A stretch of 64,000 nucleotides of DNA. Source: Laetmonice hystrix. Lineage: Eukaryota. Location of the stretch: contig OZ249436.1 of assembly GCA_965235115.1 (NCBI GenBank), positions 7,998,001 to 8,062,000 on the forward strand, given 5' to 3'. The notes under the pieces were generated by a model, which was not told where the DNA came from, did no database searches, and saw only the letters and a list, made by a program, of their open reading frames with translations. The position numbers and the translations under genes were made by a program. How positions within the stretch are numbered: the stretch's first letter is position 1; each line of letters begins with the position of its first letter. Shown piece after piece: positions 20,332-64,000 of this stretch.

Positions 20332-20352
20332 ATGTATCCTAATCGACATCCC
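20332..20352 (+). CDS. gro (TLE): groucho coding exon 1 (MYPNRHP)
   Basis: ATG at 20332; donor CCC|GTAAGT, phase 0; resembles the N-termini of TLE (MFPQSRHP) and fly Gro (MYPSPVRHP). Confidence 0.92.
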
Positions 20353-20536: not shown

Positions 20537-20634
20537 GCCCCTCACCAACCGGGCCAGCCGTTCAAGTTCACTGTGGCCGAATCATGTGACCGAATCAAGG
20601 AGGAATTCAGCTTCTTACAAGCCCAGTATCACAG
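20537..20634 (+). CDS. gro (TLE): groucho exon 2, Q domain ([33 protein letters not shown])
   Basis: Acceptor TTCTTTTCCACTACAG, donor AG|GTAAGC, 98 nt, phase 0 to 2. Confidence 0.98.
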
Positions 20635-23066: not shown

Positions 23067-23130
23067 TTTAAAAATGGAATGCGAGAAGTTGGCGCAGGAG
23101 AAAACCGAGATGCAGCGACACTATGTGATG
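23067..23130 (+). CDS. gro (TLE): groucho exon 3, Q domain (LKMECEKLAQEKTEMQRHYVM)
   Basis: T-rich acceptor ...AAACAG, donor ATG|GTGAGT, 64 nt, phase 2 to 0. Confidence 0.98.
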
Positions 23131-26529: not shown

Positions 26530-26574
26530 TATTATGAAATGTCCTATGGACTCAACGTAGAAATGCATAAACAG
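26530..26574 (+). CDS. gro (TLE): groucho exon 4, Q domain (YYEMSYGLNVEMHKQ)
   Basis: Acceptor TTCTTGTTTCAG, donor CAG|GTAAGA, 45 nt. Confidence 0.98.
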
Positions 26575-41088: not shown

Positions 41089-41151
41089 ACTGAGATTGCC
41101 AAGCGGCTAAACGCAATAATCGCCCAGGTCATCCCGTTCTTGTCTCAGGAG
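41089..41151 (+). CDS. gro (TLE): groucho exon 5, Q domain (TEIAKRLNAIIAQVIPFLSQE)
   Basis: Acceptor TTTCTTTCTGATTTCAG, donor GAG|GTAGGT, 63 nt. Confidence 0.98.
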
Positions 41152-42038: not shown

Positions 42039-42113
42039 CATCAACAGCAGGTGGCAGCAGCAGTCGAACGTGCCAAGCAGGTCACCATGACAGAACTCAA
42101 CGCCATTATAGGG
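42039..42113 (+). CDS. gro (TLE): groucho exon 6, end of Q domain ([25 protein letters not shown])
   Basis: Acceptor CTTCTCTTTTCTAG, donor GGG|GTGAGT, 75 nt. Confidence 0.98.
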
Positions 42114-43779: not shown

Positions 43780-43954
43780 CAACAGATGCAGGCGCAGCAC
43801 CTGCCGCACGCCCACGCGCCACCCATCCCCATGCCGCCCCACCCGGGCATGCCCGGAGCCCCCGGCATGCCCCCCTCCTCCAGTGCCGGACTCCTCGGGG
43901 TCATGGGTGGAGCACTCTCCGCCTCCCACCTAGCCCAAGTCAAAGACGAGAAAG
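43780..43954 (+). CDS. gro (TLE): groucho exon 7, GP domain (QQMQAQHLPHAHAPP...SHLAQVKDEK)
   Basis: Acceptor TTTACTTTTGTTGCCGCAG, donor AAAG|GTCAGT, 175 nt, phase 0 to 1; Gly/Pro-rich like the TLE GP domain. Confidence 0.95.
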
Positions 43955-46133
43955 GTCAGTTCCAAAGAGGTATGAAAATCGGATAATAAAAAGGTTTTGC
44001 ATGAAAGAGTGTGTTGGAAAATGGAAGTCTATAGGAACGGAGCCATCAAAGAAATATCATTAGTCCCTTGACAGTGTATTAAGTGTGAATCGGACTTTGT
44101 ATTGTAGCCAAGTGTAAACGTTTAAATCTCAGGGTGGGAAAGGAGAAAGTACCGTTTTCAGAACATGACATAAATACAAGCAGCAGGCCCTCAACGACCG
44201 AGATTGAATGGAGAAAGGTTTATAAGAAAGTGACACTATAGAAAGGTCAGCCGGGTAATGTGACTGTAATGACGATAAGACCTCGCCCGTCTTGACAAGT
44301 TTCTTCCCTGATCTGACGGCCATCCAGCGTCATCCATCCCGTAAAACCACAAAGCGACCTCACCACAAGAGCCACAAATCAGAAATAATAACTAACCACC
44401 TTCTCTGGCGCGCCCACAAAGAGTGCCGAGGTGTTTTTGTCGGGCGGGCTTGTTTTCTCCGCCGTCGATGATTGCTGAATGGACTGGTTAAATACAAATC
44501 AGCCGAACTCGGGGACTGAGCAGCTGTCCGACCGTAGCTGAAGGTCTGTCAGGGTGGTTCGCGCAGTGGTCTTATATGTACGCCCTGGGGAAGGGAGCCG
44601 GGCAATGAATAGGGAGTACGATGTCGTGTCAAAGGTGGCTGCAGTGTCGGCACTGTCAATGGCTCCTTGGTTTTGGTGTAACTCAAGAGGAATGTTAACA
44701 CCGTAATTCAGTGGCGGATAAAAAAGACGACAAGAAAGCTTTCTGCAGTGTGAAATTTCCTACGGGTGTTACCATGCATTTTCTTTATTTTTGTTTCTTT
44801 TTTCCAAATCAGAAAGATTTGTGGAGTAATGTAAGAGCCCTGGATTTGGTTCCCACGTTGACTGCTGTACTGTAGGTAGTTATTTATCAATTTATCATCT
44901 TCTTTGTGGACAAAATTGGCTTAGATGAAAATGATAGAATTGACGATTACAATGAAAGGCACTTCTTAGATCAAAGTCTGTGTGTAATTTCAGCCGGAGA
45001 TTTTGAAGAGTGCCTATCTAGGGCCCGGTTGGGAGATTGGGGGGGGGGGGGGTGAGATGTCGTATGATCTTGGGGGGTAAGAGGTGGGGGTGGAGGTGCC
45101 TGGCCATACAAGTGACAGGCGCTGGTTCACCTGCCCCAGGTTACCGCCCTACTCCTCAATCAGTGGAAACAAGACAGCCGACTCTGTCGGTAAAGACGGG
45201 AAAATTGATACCTGTCGCAGGTCGACAGCAGGTACCCGTTACAACGGAACCGGCGCGCAGAAAGGCAACGAAAGCCGATAGTCCATGAAGAGAAACTGAA
45301 GACTCCGTCTAATGACTACTTCGTGCTGTAGCTCTGGCAAGCATGTCGCGACTTCAATACATTCTGAGCCAGGCCGGAAAAAAACCCCAGGGGTAAACTA
45401 TTAGTGTGACTGACTGTCCGTCTACCGTGTAGCGTTTGAAATATGGTGATTAGAGTTGTACACCTTGGTAGGGAAAGGAGCCGAGGGGCTGTGAGTGGCA
45501 GGGTCTCAGGTAGGGGGTTCACTAGTTAGTAACTAAATCCACGGGGGTAGGAGTAAAAGAAGGGGAGATTTGGTGGTAATCTGATCCCATGGGTCGTGTT
45601 CATGTATTCACAACCAATTGTGTAGATTTAAACATGGACCATTAGTGTGACGTGGATGGCTGGATCCTCGGTGTCAGGTGCCAACGACACTGCCAACTGG
45701 CGCTAGATAATAGGAGTTGGATACAAAAGCCCATAAAAATTATATTTGGTCTTCAAGTACGGTTGATTCTATGGGGCGTGGTTTGACTGTCGTTTGGCTT
45801 TCACTGCCGCTGATAATGTATTCATAGTAGACCTATATTTACTTTTCCCATTTCAAACATTACCCTTTGCATGTGGCTGGAACGTATTTTATGTTAGGAT
45901 GCGCTGTTGCTGGGCGCTCCATGGTAACCGCACATGCAACATTAATATCCTATCAGTTTCAGGTGATCACATGTTCCATCTATTTATTACTTGTCATTAT
46001 CAGGCGTGCTATGTGCATTTCATGTTGACTAACACGTGCCATTGCCTTTCCCTTCCAATCACCTGCTGAACGCTCTGGACTTACCATTGGTTGTCACGCA
46101 ATGTCGGTTGTCATGGCAACCTACAACTGACAG

Positions 46134-57458: not shown

Positions 57459-58692
57459 GATTGTTGGACCCACCTGTAGGTCACATGAACATGGAGATAT
57501 TTCTGATGTAATGTTAGCAATGAACCACACATCACAGGCCGTGGGTTTCCATAGATTGTTAGCCCCACCTGTAGGTCACATGAACATGGAGATATTTCTG
57601 ATGTAATGTTAGCAATGAACCACACATCACAGGCCGTGGGTTTCCATAGATTGTTGGACCCACCTGTAGGTCACATGAACATGGAGATATTTCTGATGTA
57701 ATGTTAGCAATGAACCACACATCACAGGCCGTGGGTTTCCATAGATTGTTGGACCCACCTGTAGGTCACATGAACATGGAGATATTTCTGATGTAATGTT
57801 AGCAATGAAGCACACATCACAGGCCGTGGGTTTCCATAGATTGTTGGACCCACCTGTAGGTCACATGAACATGGAGATATTTCTGATGTAATGTTAGCAA
57901 TGGACCACACATCACAGGCCGTGGGTTTCCATAGATTGTTGGACCCACCTGTAGGTCACATGAACATGGAGATATTTCTGATGTAATGTTAGCAATGAAC
58001 CACACATCACAGGCCGTGGGTTTCCATAGATTGTTAGCCCCACCTGTAGGTCACATGAACATGGAGATATTTCTGATGTAATGTTAGCAATGAACCACAC
58101 ATCACAGGCCGTGGGTTTCCATAGATTGTTGGACCCACCTGTAGGTCACATGAACATGGAGATATTTCTGATGTAATGTTAGCAATGAACCACACATCAC
58201 AGGCCGTGGGTTTCCATAGATTGTTGGACCCACCTGTAGGTCACATGAACATGGAGATATTTCTGATGTAATGTTAGCAATGACATCACAGGCCGTGGGT
58301 TTCCATAGATTGTTGGACCCACCTGTAGGTCACATGAACATGGAGATATTTCTGATGTAATGTTAGCAATGAACCACACATCACAGGCCGTGGGTTTCCA
58401 TAGATTGTTGGACCCACCTGTAGGTCACATGAACATGGAGATATTTCTGATGTAATGTTAGCAATGAACCACACATCACAGGCCGTGGGTTTCCATAGAT
58501 TGTTGGACCCACCTGTAGGTCACATGAACATGGAGATATTTCTGATGTAATGTTAGCAATGAAGCACACATCACAGGCCGTGGGTTTCCATAGATTGTTG
58601 GACCCACCTGTAGGTCACATGAACATGGAGATATTTCTGATGTAATGTTAGCAATGAAGCACACATCACAGGCCGTGGGTTTCCATAGATTG
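57459..58692. repeat. Highly homogeneous tandem array, 95-nt unit, ~13 copies
   Basis: Near-identical 62-aa ORFs recur at 95-nt spacing (57627, 57722, 57817...); one unit carries a 6-nt deletion near 58283. Confidence 0.98.
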
Positions 58693-59074
58693 ATCGCACT
58701 AAGTGTGCTTCAGTTTACTCAATTGATTATTGACCGACCCGACCCATGGAGTGCCAGGTCTAAATGGACCCACAGCATCTGTATTGACAAGACAGTTCTC
58801 GGCGCTTGGCAAACACAAACCGTGGGGCTGTGGGCCGGGCAACTATTGAGGGATTGTTGGAACACTGGTGTGGGTAATAATTAATCTATGTGTGTGAACT
58901 TGTAACTGGGTTGCCGGTAGTTTCAGCTTGTGTCATTCAGTTCGTTCTTATTGTAACTGTTTGGTAAGGGAAACACATTGTGTTCATAACACAATAGGTG
59001 TACACCATTTTGAAAAGTGATATAAAACTAGCAGTGCGGCACCACATAGAAAATTGGGTTCTCTCTTTTAGTGG

Positions 59075-59422
59075 GCTAGGTGACAGGGTAAGGGCTAGGG
59101 TAAGGGCTAGGTGACAGGGTAAGGGCTAGGTGACAGGGTAAGGGCTAGGGTAAGGGCTAGGTGACAGGGTAAGGGCTAGGGTAAGGGCTAGGTGACAGGG
59201 TAAGGGCTAGGTGACAGGGTAAGGGCTAGGGTAAGGGCTAGGTGACAGGGTAAGGGCTAGGGTAAGGGCTAGGTGACAGGGTAAGGGCTAGGTGACAGGG
59301 TAAGGGCTAGGGTAAGGGCTAGGTGACAGGGTAAGGGCTAGGGTAAGGGCTAGGTGACAGGGTAAGGGCTAGGTGACAGGGTAAGGGCTAGGTGACAGGG
59401 TAAGGGCTAGGTGACAGGGTAA
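59075..59422 (+). repeat. G-rich compound repeat of 19-nt (GGGCTAGGTGACAGGGTAA) and 13-nt (GGGCTAGGGGTAA) units
   Basis: Direct reading; dense GGG tracts fit the G-quadruplex pattern. Confidence 0.96.
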
Positions 59423-59467
59423 GAGCAAAATGGTGGGATACGTTTTCGTTGATCAGTGTATTAGAAT

Positions 59468-61004: not shown

Positions 61005-61118
61005 AGAAGCTCAGCATCACCTAATGACCGAGAAAAGTACGATCCCAGAAATCGAAGTAGGTCGCCCGAGGTAAACAATGCTGCAGGAAAGAAGAGACGC
61101 ATGGAGAAGGATGGAGGG
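61005..61118 (+). CDS. gro (TLE): groucho exon 9, CcN domain with NLS (RSSASPNDREKY...GKKRRMEKDGG)
   Basis: Acceptor TTTCCTGTTGTATTTTCCAG; 114 nt, phase 0-0 using a weak GGG|GTTCGT donor; the basic KKRR cluster precedes the CK2 site as in Gro/TLE. Confidence 0.85.
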
Positions 61119-61836: not shown

Positions 61837-61890
61837 GACAGTGATGGGGAGAAAAGTGACCAAGATTTAGTTGTTGATGATTCCAATGAG
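61837..61890 (+). CDS. gro (TLE): groucho exon 10, CcN domain with CK2 site (DSDGEKSDQDLVVDDSNE)
   Basis: Acceptor TTTGTTTGTTTTTAG, donor GAG|GTAAGA, 54 nt; closely matches TLE DSDGDKSDDNLVVDVSNE. Confidence 0.98.
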
Positions 61891-62334: not shown

Positions 62335-63131
62335 ATTGTCTAGGTTCCTGATTATTTCCTCAGTTTCCACCTGTCTTAGCGCCTCTCTGACTGTATCCAG
62401 TGTTACCTGTAGACCTTAGATCCAACCACACCTTCCTCATCTGCATGCTCGATCTTGTTCTGTGGTTCCTGGTTGGGATGGGTGGGCGGTTCCCAGCTAA
62501 AAGCCAAAGTTAGTTCAGAAACTGCATGTGTATTTCTCACGTTTTTTTCTCTATCTCATCTCGTGAAAGGCAAAGAAATTATTCTCTTCTACACATTTTA
62601 TTTTGTTCCAAGACGAGTCGTGGAAACCTGTCAGGGTTTTGGGAAGAACCCTTTAAAAAATCACGAATGCTTTACCTGAACCTATTCACCAAACATATCT
62701 GGATAGTCTGATATGCCATTCGTTTTGTGTACCAGTAGTATAATTGGCTGACTTTGTCGTATTGTCTAAACTTTGTAGCATTGCCAGCAACTTGCAACGT
62801 GTATAGTCGGGCTGTGATTTTCGTATTAACACACAGTACAGTTTATTTGATCTTAGGTGCAGTTGAAGAGTGGAATTCACAGTACATGTATTCTCAAAAA
62901 TGCTGAAAACTGATTGCGTTTAGGTGTTCTTTCCATGATGTAGTTGCGAGAGTTTGGTGTGCGGTGGATTTGTTTGTAGCATGCTTCATGTATTCACGTC
63001 GGACGGGGCCCAGTCTCATGTATCGGGATACTAACTGGACTAACACTGACAAAGGCTAACGTTACGTTGGATTAGGTTAATGTTTGGTGTAGGCTAGTAT
63101 ATTCAGTCAGCATGATGGTTATATTTTACAG

Positions 63132-63272
63132 CCGGTCTCACCGTTGAATGGCGAGCGGTCGCCACGGGAAAATGGTCCAAACGATAAATCGCACAAGGAC
63201 AAGGCACCTGTGAGTCCACGAAGCGATGGGTCGTCACACGCCAGCACGCCGTCATCGAAACACAAAGACCAG
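63132..63272 (+). CDS. gro (TLE): groucho exon 11, start of SP domain (PVSPLNGERSPRENG...SKHKDQ)
   Basis: Acceptor TATATTTTACAG, donor CAG|GTAGTG, 141 nt, phase 0-0; conserved SPRENG motif. Confidence 0.92.
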
Positions 63273-63398
63273 GTAGTGGATCCAGCCATAATGGCTGCCA
63301 ACATGGCGGCTAACATGGCCGCCGCGGGGAGTGCTATGGGAAGGGGCGGGCCCATACCAATGTTTCCCATGTTTCCTCTGTATGGGTTTTACAGATAG
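63273..63398 (+). CDS. gro (TLE): Candidate alternative C-terminus by read-through of exon 11 (VVDPAIMAANMAANMAAAGSAMGRGGPIPMFPMFPLYGFYR*)
   Basis: Frame stays open for 41 protein-like codons to TAG 63396-63398; AT-rich UTR-like sequence follows. Confidence 0.55.
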   Translation, partial: VVDPAIMAANMAANMAAAGSAMGRGGPIPMFPMFPLYGFYR

Positions 63399-63935
63399 AC
63401 TCGGATAACACCCAACCTCGGCACTCCGTGCTCTCACACCTCGCCATTGCTAACTCAAAACGACTCCCAGGAATCTTATTTGTGTACATAGACACTGTCA
63501 TGTTGTAAAGTAAGAACTTAGTGATACCGGTTTCCTTTAAGGAGACTGGACAAAATAAGATTAACAGATAACAATAATGAGGTAAATTTATTGTACATGA
63601 AACAGTGAATGTGATATATTGTTTATAACTGCAGTGAAATTGTTTAATTTGACTAGAAGTTGTCTATATATCCTCTTATATTACTAAATGTGATCACTTA
63701 TTATTATTATTATCATTATTACCTTATTATTATGGTTATTCTGTATTTGGTCGCTATATTGTACATTTATTATTTCTTGTTTATAGCCAAAGCTTAATGT
63801 TTTCTGTAAGAGAAAATTCAGTTGTGACGTAAGTGCGGGTGGGAAGGAGGGATCTGGGCAAACACGCCTCTCTTAGATCTGTTTCCAATCCACGATCACA
63901 GTCGGCCGCTATTGTACATGTACCTCTCTGTTGGC

Positions 63936-63980
63936 AATAAATTGTATTAGAACCAAAATGGTGGCTGATGTTGTGTCTAA
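63936..63980 (+). terminator. Candidate intronic polyadenylation signal
   Basis: AATAAA 63936-63941, several TGTA motifs upstream, GT-rich element at ~63961-63978. Confidence 0.45.
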
Positions 63981-64000
63981 ATGCCCAAAGGTCCTCCCCA

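What the first reader, a model, noticed from the sequence alone, without database searches (positions are those of the whole stretch)
63273..63980. Intron read-through plus polyadenylation predicts a WD40-less short Groucho with its own tail
Past the exon 11 donor the frame continues 41 codons (VVDPAIMAANMAANMAAAGSAMGRGGPIPMFPMFPLYGFYR*). Its Met/Ala/Pro composition is protein-like and recalls the SP-domain segment MSAAAAAAAVVAYGRSPM of TLE1. It is followed by ~540 nt of AT-rich UTR-like sequence with at least seven TGTA (CFIm) motifs, AATAAA at 63936 and a GT-rich downstream element. The product would be ~331 aa (Q+GP+CcN+partial SP) without the WD40 propeller that binds WRPW/eh1 motifs. Vertebrates make such modulators from a separate gene (AES/TLE5) or short splice forms; here a single invertebrate gene might make one by intronic polyadenylation. 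I do not know whether this has been described for this lineage.
Basis: partly seen in the sequence, partly recalled or inferred. Interest (0 to 1): 0.8.

Follow-up and report, generated by a model that had tools for sequence, protein, structure and literature searches.

The report
Short WD40-less Groucho transcript, RNA-supported
In this invertebrate's only Groucho/TLE co-repressor gene, assembled RNA runs straight through one splice donor into the intron and stops there, predicting a 315-333 aa protein without the WD40 propeller; mammals already make such short forms, so this is a new example, not a new mechanism.

Summary
The sequence observation holds. After the exon ending at 63272, the frame stays open for 41 codons to a TAG at 63396. 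GC falls from 0.56 to 0.35 at that stop. TGTA occurs nine times downstream, and AATAAA sits at 63936.

An open frame of this length is not rare: 20% of GT-started intronic frames in this gene are as long. The decisive evidence is RNA. One run (X4) behaves as RNA. It holds a 654-nt contig that joins exon 9 directly to exon 11, skipping the 54-nt exon 10. The contig then continues unspliced through 63272 to about 63690-63719. No X4 sequence lies on 63727-64666.

The read-through transcript is therefore real. It ends about 230 nt before the predicted AATAAA, and no poly(A) tail could be seen.

A close relative keeps the whole tail and its stop. More distant animals have unrelated short tails after the same exon. 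The genome has a single TLE_N locus.

Human TLE1 makes a WD40-less form by intronic polyadenylation, and mouse Grg1-S and Grg3b are similar. I call this a new member of a known kind.

The parts
61005..61118 (+). Exon 9 (CcN region with the KKRR nuclear-localisation motif). It is 114 nt, phase 0 at both ends, with donor GTTCGT.
   Evidence: Sequence. tblastn to short and partial Groucho proteins P0024, P0019 and P0017. Its last 65 nt are the loose letters at the 5' end of RNA contig 22 of X4.
61837..61890 (+). Exon 10, a 54-nt frame-preserving cassette encoding the acidic Ser/Asp stretch DSDGEKSDQDLVVDDSNE (the CK2-site part of CcN). It is skipped in the RNA contig.
   Evidence: Sequence. 94% identical to P0017 and present in P0010 and P0024. 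X4 has no depth on it, and contig 22 joins 61118 directly to 63132.
63132..63272 (+). Exon 11 (end of CcN and start of SP), 47 codons, phase 0 at both ends.
   Evidence: The exon is conserved in many animals; 25 columns are invariant in alignment A1.
63273..63278 (+). Canonical 5' splice site CAG|GTAGTG. Of the 11 donors of this gene that I read, it is the only one without G at +5.
   Evidence: Donor listings. In the other animals the open frame leaves conserved sequence at the same point, just after KHK(D/E), usually with V, that is GTN. Exon 12 at extended coordinates 64609-64711 continues the frame and matches P0024.
63273..63398 (+). Read-through coding tail of 41 codons plus TAG. It is rich in Met, Ala, Pro and Gly, with GC 0.56.
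   Evidence: It lies inside RNA contig 22. It is kept with the same stop and 2 substitutions in close relative P0001.
63399..63690 (+). 3'UTR-like sequence covered by the RNA contig (GC 0.35; TGTA at 63483, 63504 and 63592).
   Evidence: X4 contig 22 lies on L008 1432-1991, which is window 63131-63690. Another 29 letters of the contig fall in the masked repeat. Motifs.
63683..63688 (+). ACTAAA, the only hexamer of the AATAAA-variant list I scanned within 40 nt upstream of the contig's end. I take it as the candidate proximal poly(A) signal (inferred).
   Evidence: Motif scan. The contig ends at 63690-63719.
63691..63726 (+). TTA-rich low-complexity stretch in which the RNA contig ends. The aligner masks it, so the last 29 letters of the contig could not be read.
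   Evidence: One search lists 'skipped repeats 1992-2027'. One search found microsatellite matches elsewhere in the genome.
63735..63755 (+). GU/U-rich stretch that could serve as the downstream element of a proximal cleavage site (inferred).
   Evidence: Read from the sequence.
63727..64000 (+). No RNA contig of X4 lies here.
   Evidence: X4 depth is 0 in bins L008 2001-2800. The 0.65 word share is explained by contig 22 alone.

Best explanation
The single Groucho/TLE gene has a composite terminal exon. When the weak donor at 63272|63273 (CAG|GTAGTG) is not spliced, the transcript runs on through 41 more codons, a TAG and about 300-320 nt of AT-rich 3'UTR. It most likely ends by cleavage and polyadenylation at about 63.70-63.72 kb, inside the 1336-nt intron. 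The mRNA encodes a 315-333 aa protein with the Q oligomerisation and TCF-binding domain, the GP domain, the nuclear-localisation part of CcN and the start of SP, but no WD40 propeller. By analogy with AES/TLE5, Grg1-S and human TLE1-IPA, it should enter the nucleus and co-oligomerise with full-length Groucho through Q. It would then lower or alter recruitment by WRPW- and eh1-motif repressors, while still being able to meet Q-domain partners such as TCF. What is shown: the read-through RNA, its end inside the intron, the exon 10 skipping and the intact frame. What is inferred: polyadenylation, translation and the modulatory role.
For: X1-X3 cover the 6-kb stretch evenly, so they are DNA. X4 covers only exon-like pieces and carries a GT..AG joint, so it is RNA. 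X4 contig 22 (654 nt, mean word depth 59) starts with 65 letters that match the 3' end of exon 9. It then lies without any joint on window 63131-63690, so it crosses both 63272 and the alternative donor at 63380. It ends in the TTA-rich stretch. No X4 sequence lies on 63727-64666. The only spliced downstream X4 contig (exon 12 to exon 13, joint 64711 to 67011) has depth 7.9 and begins in mid exon 12. An exon 11 to exon 12 junction is therefore absent from X4's contigs. X4's word share of 0.65 for 63100-63990 equals what contig 22 alone would give. GC falls from 0.56 to 0.35 exactly at the stop. The donor is the only one of 11 in the gene that lacks G at +5. A close relative keeps the 41 codons and the stop. 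There is one TLE_N locus in the genome. A precedent exists: human TLE1 makes a Q+GP protein by intronic polyadenylation, and that protein is nuclear, dimerises and dampens TLE1-dependent transcription (PMC12456218). Spliced short forms of long TLE genes are also known (PMC2997355, PMC3698143).
Against: No poly(A) tail or read ends were seen, because only contigs were available and the contig's last 29 letters fall in a masked repeat. No canonical AATAAA or ATTAAA lies near the contig's end, only ACTAAA. There is one RNA run, from one sample of unknown tissue. The tool itself warns that contig depth cannot rank parts of a gene and that contigs drop rare variants. A 41-codon open frame arises by chance in about 20% of comparable intronic frames. 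The tail is not conserved beyond one close relative. With 2 changes in 41 tail residues against 2 in 47 exon residues, and no DNA from the relative, constraint cannot be measured. Translation is untested.
Confidence: 0.6

Rival explanations
1. This is intron retention or unspliced nuclear pre-mRNA, possibly with an assembly artefact. The contig would only reflect incompletely processed transcripts stitched onto the spliced exon 9-11 path, not a stable polyadenylated mRNA.
For: Transcriptome contigs of other animals run 50-53 nt into introns of this gene and then stop (L010 after the same exon, L011 after exon 12). This shows that such tips are common. No poly(A) was seen and there is no canonical signal at the contig's end. 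The open frame is not statistically unusual.
Against: Here the read-through is at least 418 nt long. It ends abruptly, with no X4 sequence on the remaining roughly 900 nt of the intron. It lies in the same unbranched contig as the exon 9-11 junction, while the exon 11-12 junction is missing and the downstream spliced contig is about 7 times shallower. Plain retention should cover the whole intron.
Confidence: 0.22
2. The region 63273 to about 63690 is a long exon extension that is spliced again from a downstream donor (for example GTGATC at 63690) to later exons. This would give a transcript with a premature stop that is degraded by nonsense-mediated decay, so it would be regulated unproductive splicing and not a protein isoform.
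For: The alignment of contig 22 stops at 63690, just where a GT occurs, and its last 29 letters are unread. The word share of 0.65 cannot separate an end at 63690 from one at 63719.
Against: The alignment stop coincides with the start of the aligner's masked repeat, which explains it without splicing. GTGATC is a poor donor. Targets of nonsense-mediated decay are normally rare, whereas this contig is deeper than the productive downstream contig.
Confidence: 0.1
3. The coding exon simply extends to the later donor GTATGG at 63380, and the tail is ordinary SP-domain sequence of the full-length protein.
For: A GT with a purine at +3 lies at 63380, and the tail has exon-like GC.
Against: An exon ending at 63379 is in phase 2, while exon 12 starts in phase 0. 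Joining them shifts the frame and gives a stop at the end of exon 12. The RNA contig passes 63380 unspliced. In other animals' genomic DNA the open frame diverges just after KHK(D/E), and in the two transcript-derived proteins that span it (P0024, P0017) this exon is followed directly by the exon 12 sequence.
Confidence: 0.03

Closest known systems
Human TLE1-IPA isoform (transcript TLE1-201; RNA Biol 2025, PMC12456218)
   Same: A long Groucho/TLE gene makes a C-terminally truncated, WD40-less protein when transcripts terminate inside an intron. A few to a few dozen intron-encoded residues are added before the stop, and the Q domain is retained.
   Different: The human form ends in intron 6, after Q+GP (200 aa, 8 new residues), and lacks the nuclear-localisation signal. 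Here the end is five exons later, so the product keeps the nuclear-localisation motif and the first part of SP and adds 41 residues. The human form has 3'-end sequencing, half-life and protein data; here there is one RNA contig.
Mouse Grg1-S and Grg3b, the 'short Grouchos' made from long TLE genes (cited in PMC2997355 and PMC3698143)
   Same: Truncated products of a long Groucho gene that keep the N-terminal domains and lack WD40.
   Different: These papers call them alternative splice products with Q and GP only. The present form reaches into SP and seems to arise by failure to splice plus termination within the intron.
AES/TLE5 (vertebrates) and LSY-22 (C. elegans)
   Same: Small Q-domain proteins without WD40 that partner or modulate full-length Groucho. 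This is the functional niche proposed for the present isoform.
   Different: They are separate genes. This genome shows a single TLE_N locus, so the isoform is not an AES or LSY-22 orthologue.
P0010, a 309-aa Groucho ORF on a 1288-nt JGI contig, probably transcript-derived, from another animal
   Same: It ends by read-through of the donor of the same exon (KHKE, then 15 intron-encoded residues) and has Q, GP and CcN.
   Different: That contig stops 4 nt after the stop codon, 53 nt into the intron, so it may be only an assembly tip. Its tail is unrelated and it includes exon 10.

Membership tests
Groucho/TLE co-repressor gene | N-terminal TLE_N (Q) domain | tested here: met
   PF03920 matches above the curated cut-off at window 20561-42125, exon by exon. 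Those exons are 80-100% identical to P0024 and P0019, which carry PF03920.
Groucho/TLE co-repressor gene | C-terminal WD40 propeller encoded by the same gene | tested here: met
   Downstream exons at extended coordinates 69345-82834 encode the WD region and the C-terminal YEVIF. They are 93% identical to P0019 over 60 residues.
Short Groucho made from a long gene (TLE1-IPA, Grg1-S type) | The transcript retains the Q and GP exons and stops in frame before any WD40 exon | tested here: met
   Exons 1-11 plus the tail assemble into one open frame of 333 or 315 aa. The RNA contig carries the exon 9-11 junction, the tail and the stop. Exons 1-8 were not seen on the same contig.
Short Groucho made from a long gene (TLE1-IPA, Grg1-S type) | The protein product exists | not testable with these tools
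   No proteomic or ribosome-profiling data could be reached.
Intronic polyadenylation, composite terminal exon | RNA reads through the 5' splice site and coverage ends inside the intron | tested here: met
   Contig 22 of X4 covers 63131-63690 without a joint. Depth is zero on 63727-64666. The word share of 0.65 agrees.
Intronic polyadenylation, composite terminal exon | Poly(A) signal hexamer 10-35 nt upstream of the end | tested here: inconclusive
   There is no AATAAA or ATTAAA near 63690-63719. Only the rare variant ACTAAA is present, at 63683. The canonical AATAAA at 63936 lies in sequence without RNA.
Intronic polyadenylation, composite terminal exon | Untemplated poly(A) at the 3' end | not testable with these tools
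   Only contigs were available.
AES/TLE5 orthologue | A separate locus encoding only Q+GP | tested here: not met
   The only TLE_N matches in the 627-Mb assembly are in this gene. The search is exon by exon, so the count is a lower bound.

The most novel reading that the evidence does not exclude
In this spiralian the WD40-less, exon-10-less short form would be the predominant product of the only Groucho gene in the sampled tissue. It would act as the lineage's own AES/TLE5 equivalent, evolved independently through a weakened donor plus an intronic termination site. Its lineage-specific Met/Ala/Pro tail with an aromatic end (FPMFPLYGFYR) would be a functional C-terminus, for example a partner-binding peptide.
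Probability: 0.15. Interest if true: 0.55.

Novelty: new member of a known kind. Interest (0 to 1): 0.4.

Why it matters
Groucho/TLE output depends on how many WD40 propellers sit in each Q-domain oligomer. Vertebrates tune this with a separate gene (AES/TLE5) and with truncated products of the long genes. An invertebrate with a single Groucho gene that reaches the same result through one weak donor and termination inside the intron would be an independent route to a short Groucho. It would also be a simple handle for manipulating Notch, Wnt and segmentation co-repression in a spiralian model, by strengthening the donor or deleting the intronic end site. For annotation, the gene needs a second 3' end and a cassette exon 10.

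Tried and rejected
- Neutral baseline for the tail. I asked for the relative's contig, but no DNA was served. I then searched an intronic 74-aa ORF (62455-62676) to recover the relative's copy and found nothing. No dN/dS or neutral comparison is therefore possible.
- Tail in JGI metagenome and metatranscriptome contigs: 600 pattern matches, none confirmed (one search was a size slip).
- Exon 11 relatives in the same collection: 14 loci, most of them apparently genomic (one is the short JGI contig of P0010), whose tails (three translated) are unrelated.
- The 1.84-billion representative search found 15 hits. Only P0001 covers the tail.
- A second run search with the gene's normal 3' end returned the same four runs, so no further RNA run exists for this organism in the index.
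- The donor at 63380 is rejected on frame and on RNA evidence.
- The tail and UTR are not repeat-derived. Only the TTA microsatellite matches elsewhere in the genome.
- I did not send a complex prediction for the tail with the WD40 domain, because nothing I found claims that they bind.
- Literature searches found no description of an invertebrate Groucho short isoform made by intronic termination. The library is incomplete, so this is not proof of absence.

Full report
**What is in the sequence.**
The window is G000:C1:7998001-8062000. Its + strand carries the 5' two-thirds of a Groucho/TLE gene. Using tblastn with Groucho proteins found here (P0024, P0019, P0017) and by reading the splice sites, I placed these exons:
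- 20332-20352 (ATG)
- 20537-20634
- 23067-23130
- 26530-26574
- 41089-41151
- 42039-42113
- 43780-43960
- a doubtful micro-exon at 59080-59099
- 61005-61118
- 61837-61890
- 63132-63272

The gene continues beyond the window. Exon 12 lies at extended coordinates 64609-64711 and exon 13 at 67011-67141. The WD40 exons follow, down to the C-terminal YEVIF at about 82834.

The frame does run on for 41 codons to TAG 63396-63398. GC is 0.57 in the exon and 0.56 in the tail, and drops to 0.35 right after the stop. TGTA occurs nine times in 63399-63990 (P about 0.01 against shuffles). AATAAA is at 63936 and is followed by a GT-rich run.

The open frame is weak evidence on its own. In this gene's introns, 20% of GT-started frames stay open for 41 codons.

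**RNA evidence.**
Two run searches returned the same four runs from one sample and one study. Laid on L008 (window 61700-67699), three of them cover everything evenly and are DNA. The fourth, X4 (58 Mb of contigs), covers only exon-like pieces and carries a GT..AG joint from exon 12 to exon 13, so it is RNA.

X4's contig 22 is 654 nt long with mean word depth 59.
- Its first 65 letters end in ...AAGGATGGAGG. That is the 3' end of exon 9.
- They are joined directly to 63132, so the 54-nt exon 10 is skipped.
- The contig then lies without any joint on 63131-63690. It crosses the canonical donor, the alternative GTATGG at 63380, the tail, the stop and about 300 nt beyond.
- Its last 29 letters fall in a TTA-rich stretch (63691-63726) that the aligner masks. 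I could not see whether they are genomic or an A tail.

No X4 contig lies on 63727-64666. X4's share of the sampled words of 63100-63990 is 0.65, which is what contig 22 alone would give.

The only downstream spliced X4 contig has depth 7.9 and begins in the middle of exon 12. X4's contigs therefore contain no exon 11 to exon 12 junction. The tool warns that contig depth is a poor measure and that contigs drop rare variants. I conclude only two things. The read-through form is real in this sample. It is probably not a minor by-product, because an unbranched contig follows the intron path and not the exon 12 path.

**Where the transcript ends.**
Near that end there is no AATAAA or ATTAAA. The only variant hexamer is ACTAAA at 63683, with TGTA about 100-125 nt upstream (63592) and a GU/U-rich stretch at 63735-63755.

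This layout is compatible with a proximal cleavage site but does not prove one. The AATAAA at 63936 could be a distal site used elsewhere; X4 gives it no support.

**The donor and the rival donor.**
The donor is CAG|GTAGTG. Of the 11 donors I read in this gene, it is the only one without G at +5. A weak donor fits competition between splicing and termination within the intron.

Extending the exon to 63379 leaves phase 2 against a phase-0 exon 12 and gives a stop at the end of exon 12. The RNA does not use that donor either. That refutation scenario is excluded.

**Comparison with other animals.**
One close relative (P0001, an ENA assembly) is 95% identical over all 88 residues. It keeps the 41 codons and the same stop, with two substitutions in the tail and two in the exon. 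Constraint on the tail therefore cannot be measured.

In about a dozen more distant animals the exon is well conserved up to KHK(D/E). Where the sequences are genomic, the frame then runs into the intron (mostly V, that is GTN) and the read-through tails are short and unrelated. In the two transcript-derived proteins that span it, the exon is followed by the exon 12 sequence.

P0010 is a 309-aa Groucho ORF on a short JGI contig, probably transcript-derived. It ends 15 codons into the same intron, but the contig stops 53 nt into the intron and may be an assembly tip. A sister contig does the same after exon 12.

The truncation point may therefore recur, but the tail sequence is lineage-specific. 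No full-length Groucho aligned to the tail in the 1.84-billion representative search, so the proposed echo of the TLE1 SP segment is unsupported.

**What the product would be and do.**
The assembled frame gives 333 aa (36.6 kDa) with exon 10, or 315 aa (34.6 kDa, pI 9.4) without it. Exon 8 is uncertain by a few residues. The product has Q, GP, the KKRR nuclear-localisation motif and the first 47 residues after CcN, plus the tail. It has no WD40.

From established knowledge of the family, Q mediates tetramerisation and TCF binding, GP binds HDAC, and WD40 binds WRPW and eh1 motifs (summarised in PMC3698143 and PMC2997355). Such a protein should be nuclear, mix into Groucho oligomers and reduce their WD40 valence. 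This is inference; nothing here tests translation or function.

The genome has only one TLE_N locus, so there is no separate AES-like gene to fill that role.

**Known or new.**
Truncated products of long TLE genes are known: Grg1-S and Grg3b, cited in PMC2997355 and PMC3698143. In 2025 a human TLE1 isoform made by intronic polyadenylation (intron 6, 200 aa) was shown to be stable, translated when expressed, nuclear, dimeric and able to dampen TLE1-dependent transcription (PMC12456218).

I found no report of such an isoform in an invertebrate, but the library is incomplete. Earlier notes of this scan call the genome annelid-like. I did not test that, beyond seeing that the nearest named protein is from a gastropod.

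**Verdict.**
- This is a new member of a known kind.
- Confidence that this is a genuine terminated mRNA isoform is about 0.6.
- Interest is 0.4.

Noticed in passing
window 61837-61890: The 54-nt exon 10 (acidic Ser/Asp stretch, the CK2-site part of CcN) is a frame-preserving cassette. The RNA contig of X4 joins exon 9 directly to exon 11 and skips it, whereas P0010, P0024, P0017 and P0019 from other animals include it. It may be coupled to the short 3' end.
   Followed up: partly
L005:2045-2146 and L005:2221-2322 (extended window 75045-75146 and 75221-75322): Two tandem 102-nt exons encode alternative versions of the same WD40 segment (RDNYIRS...IWDLAA). They are 69% identical in DNA, each has its own AG and GT, and they lie 74 nt apart. 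This looks like a pair of alternative, perhaps mutually exclusive, exons that would change one blade of the Groucho propeller. Because 102 is a multiple of 3, reading frame alone would not enforce exclusivity.
   Followed up: partly
window 59073-59423: A minisatellite (periods 19, 31, 50 and 81) whose unit contains ...GACAGG|GTAAGG starts exactly at the candidate micro-exon 8. It offers a ladder of repeated donor sites (an exon of 8 or 20 nt). This is the same kind of splice-junction-seeded repeat that earlier notes of this scan report in this genome. Exon 8 is therefore uncertain.
   Followed up: partly
window 57459-58692: A 95-bp minisatellite of 13 copies, 97% matching, sits in the long intron upstream of exon 8.
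   Followed up: no
L008:4845-4994 (extended window 66544-66693): An isolated 151-nt RNA contig of X4 (depth 6.9) lies inside intron 12. It has no coding-like frame and no joint. It is unexplained and could be pre-mRNA reads, a repeat or an unannotated exon.
   Followed up: no
L005:9160-9700 and L006-L007 (extended window 82160-82700 and 87000-103000): The last intron holds a short-period tandem repeat that reads as NQRDQHGIKPSFI... in one frame. A long satellite with units of roughly 840-1900 nt starts about 4 kb downstream of the gene.
   Followed up: no
L010 (P0010) against L011 (P0024): In another animal the two transcript contigs differ by an insertion after the Q domain (NAIIG-VRTPTSLA-QQMQ against NAIIG-QQMQ). 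This suggests an alternative donor or a small exon at the Q/GP boundary.
   Followed up: no
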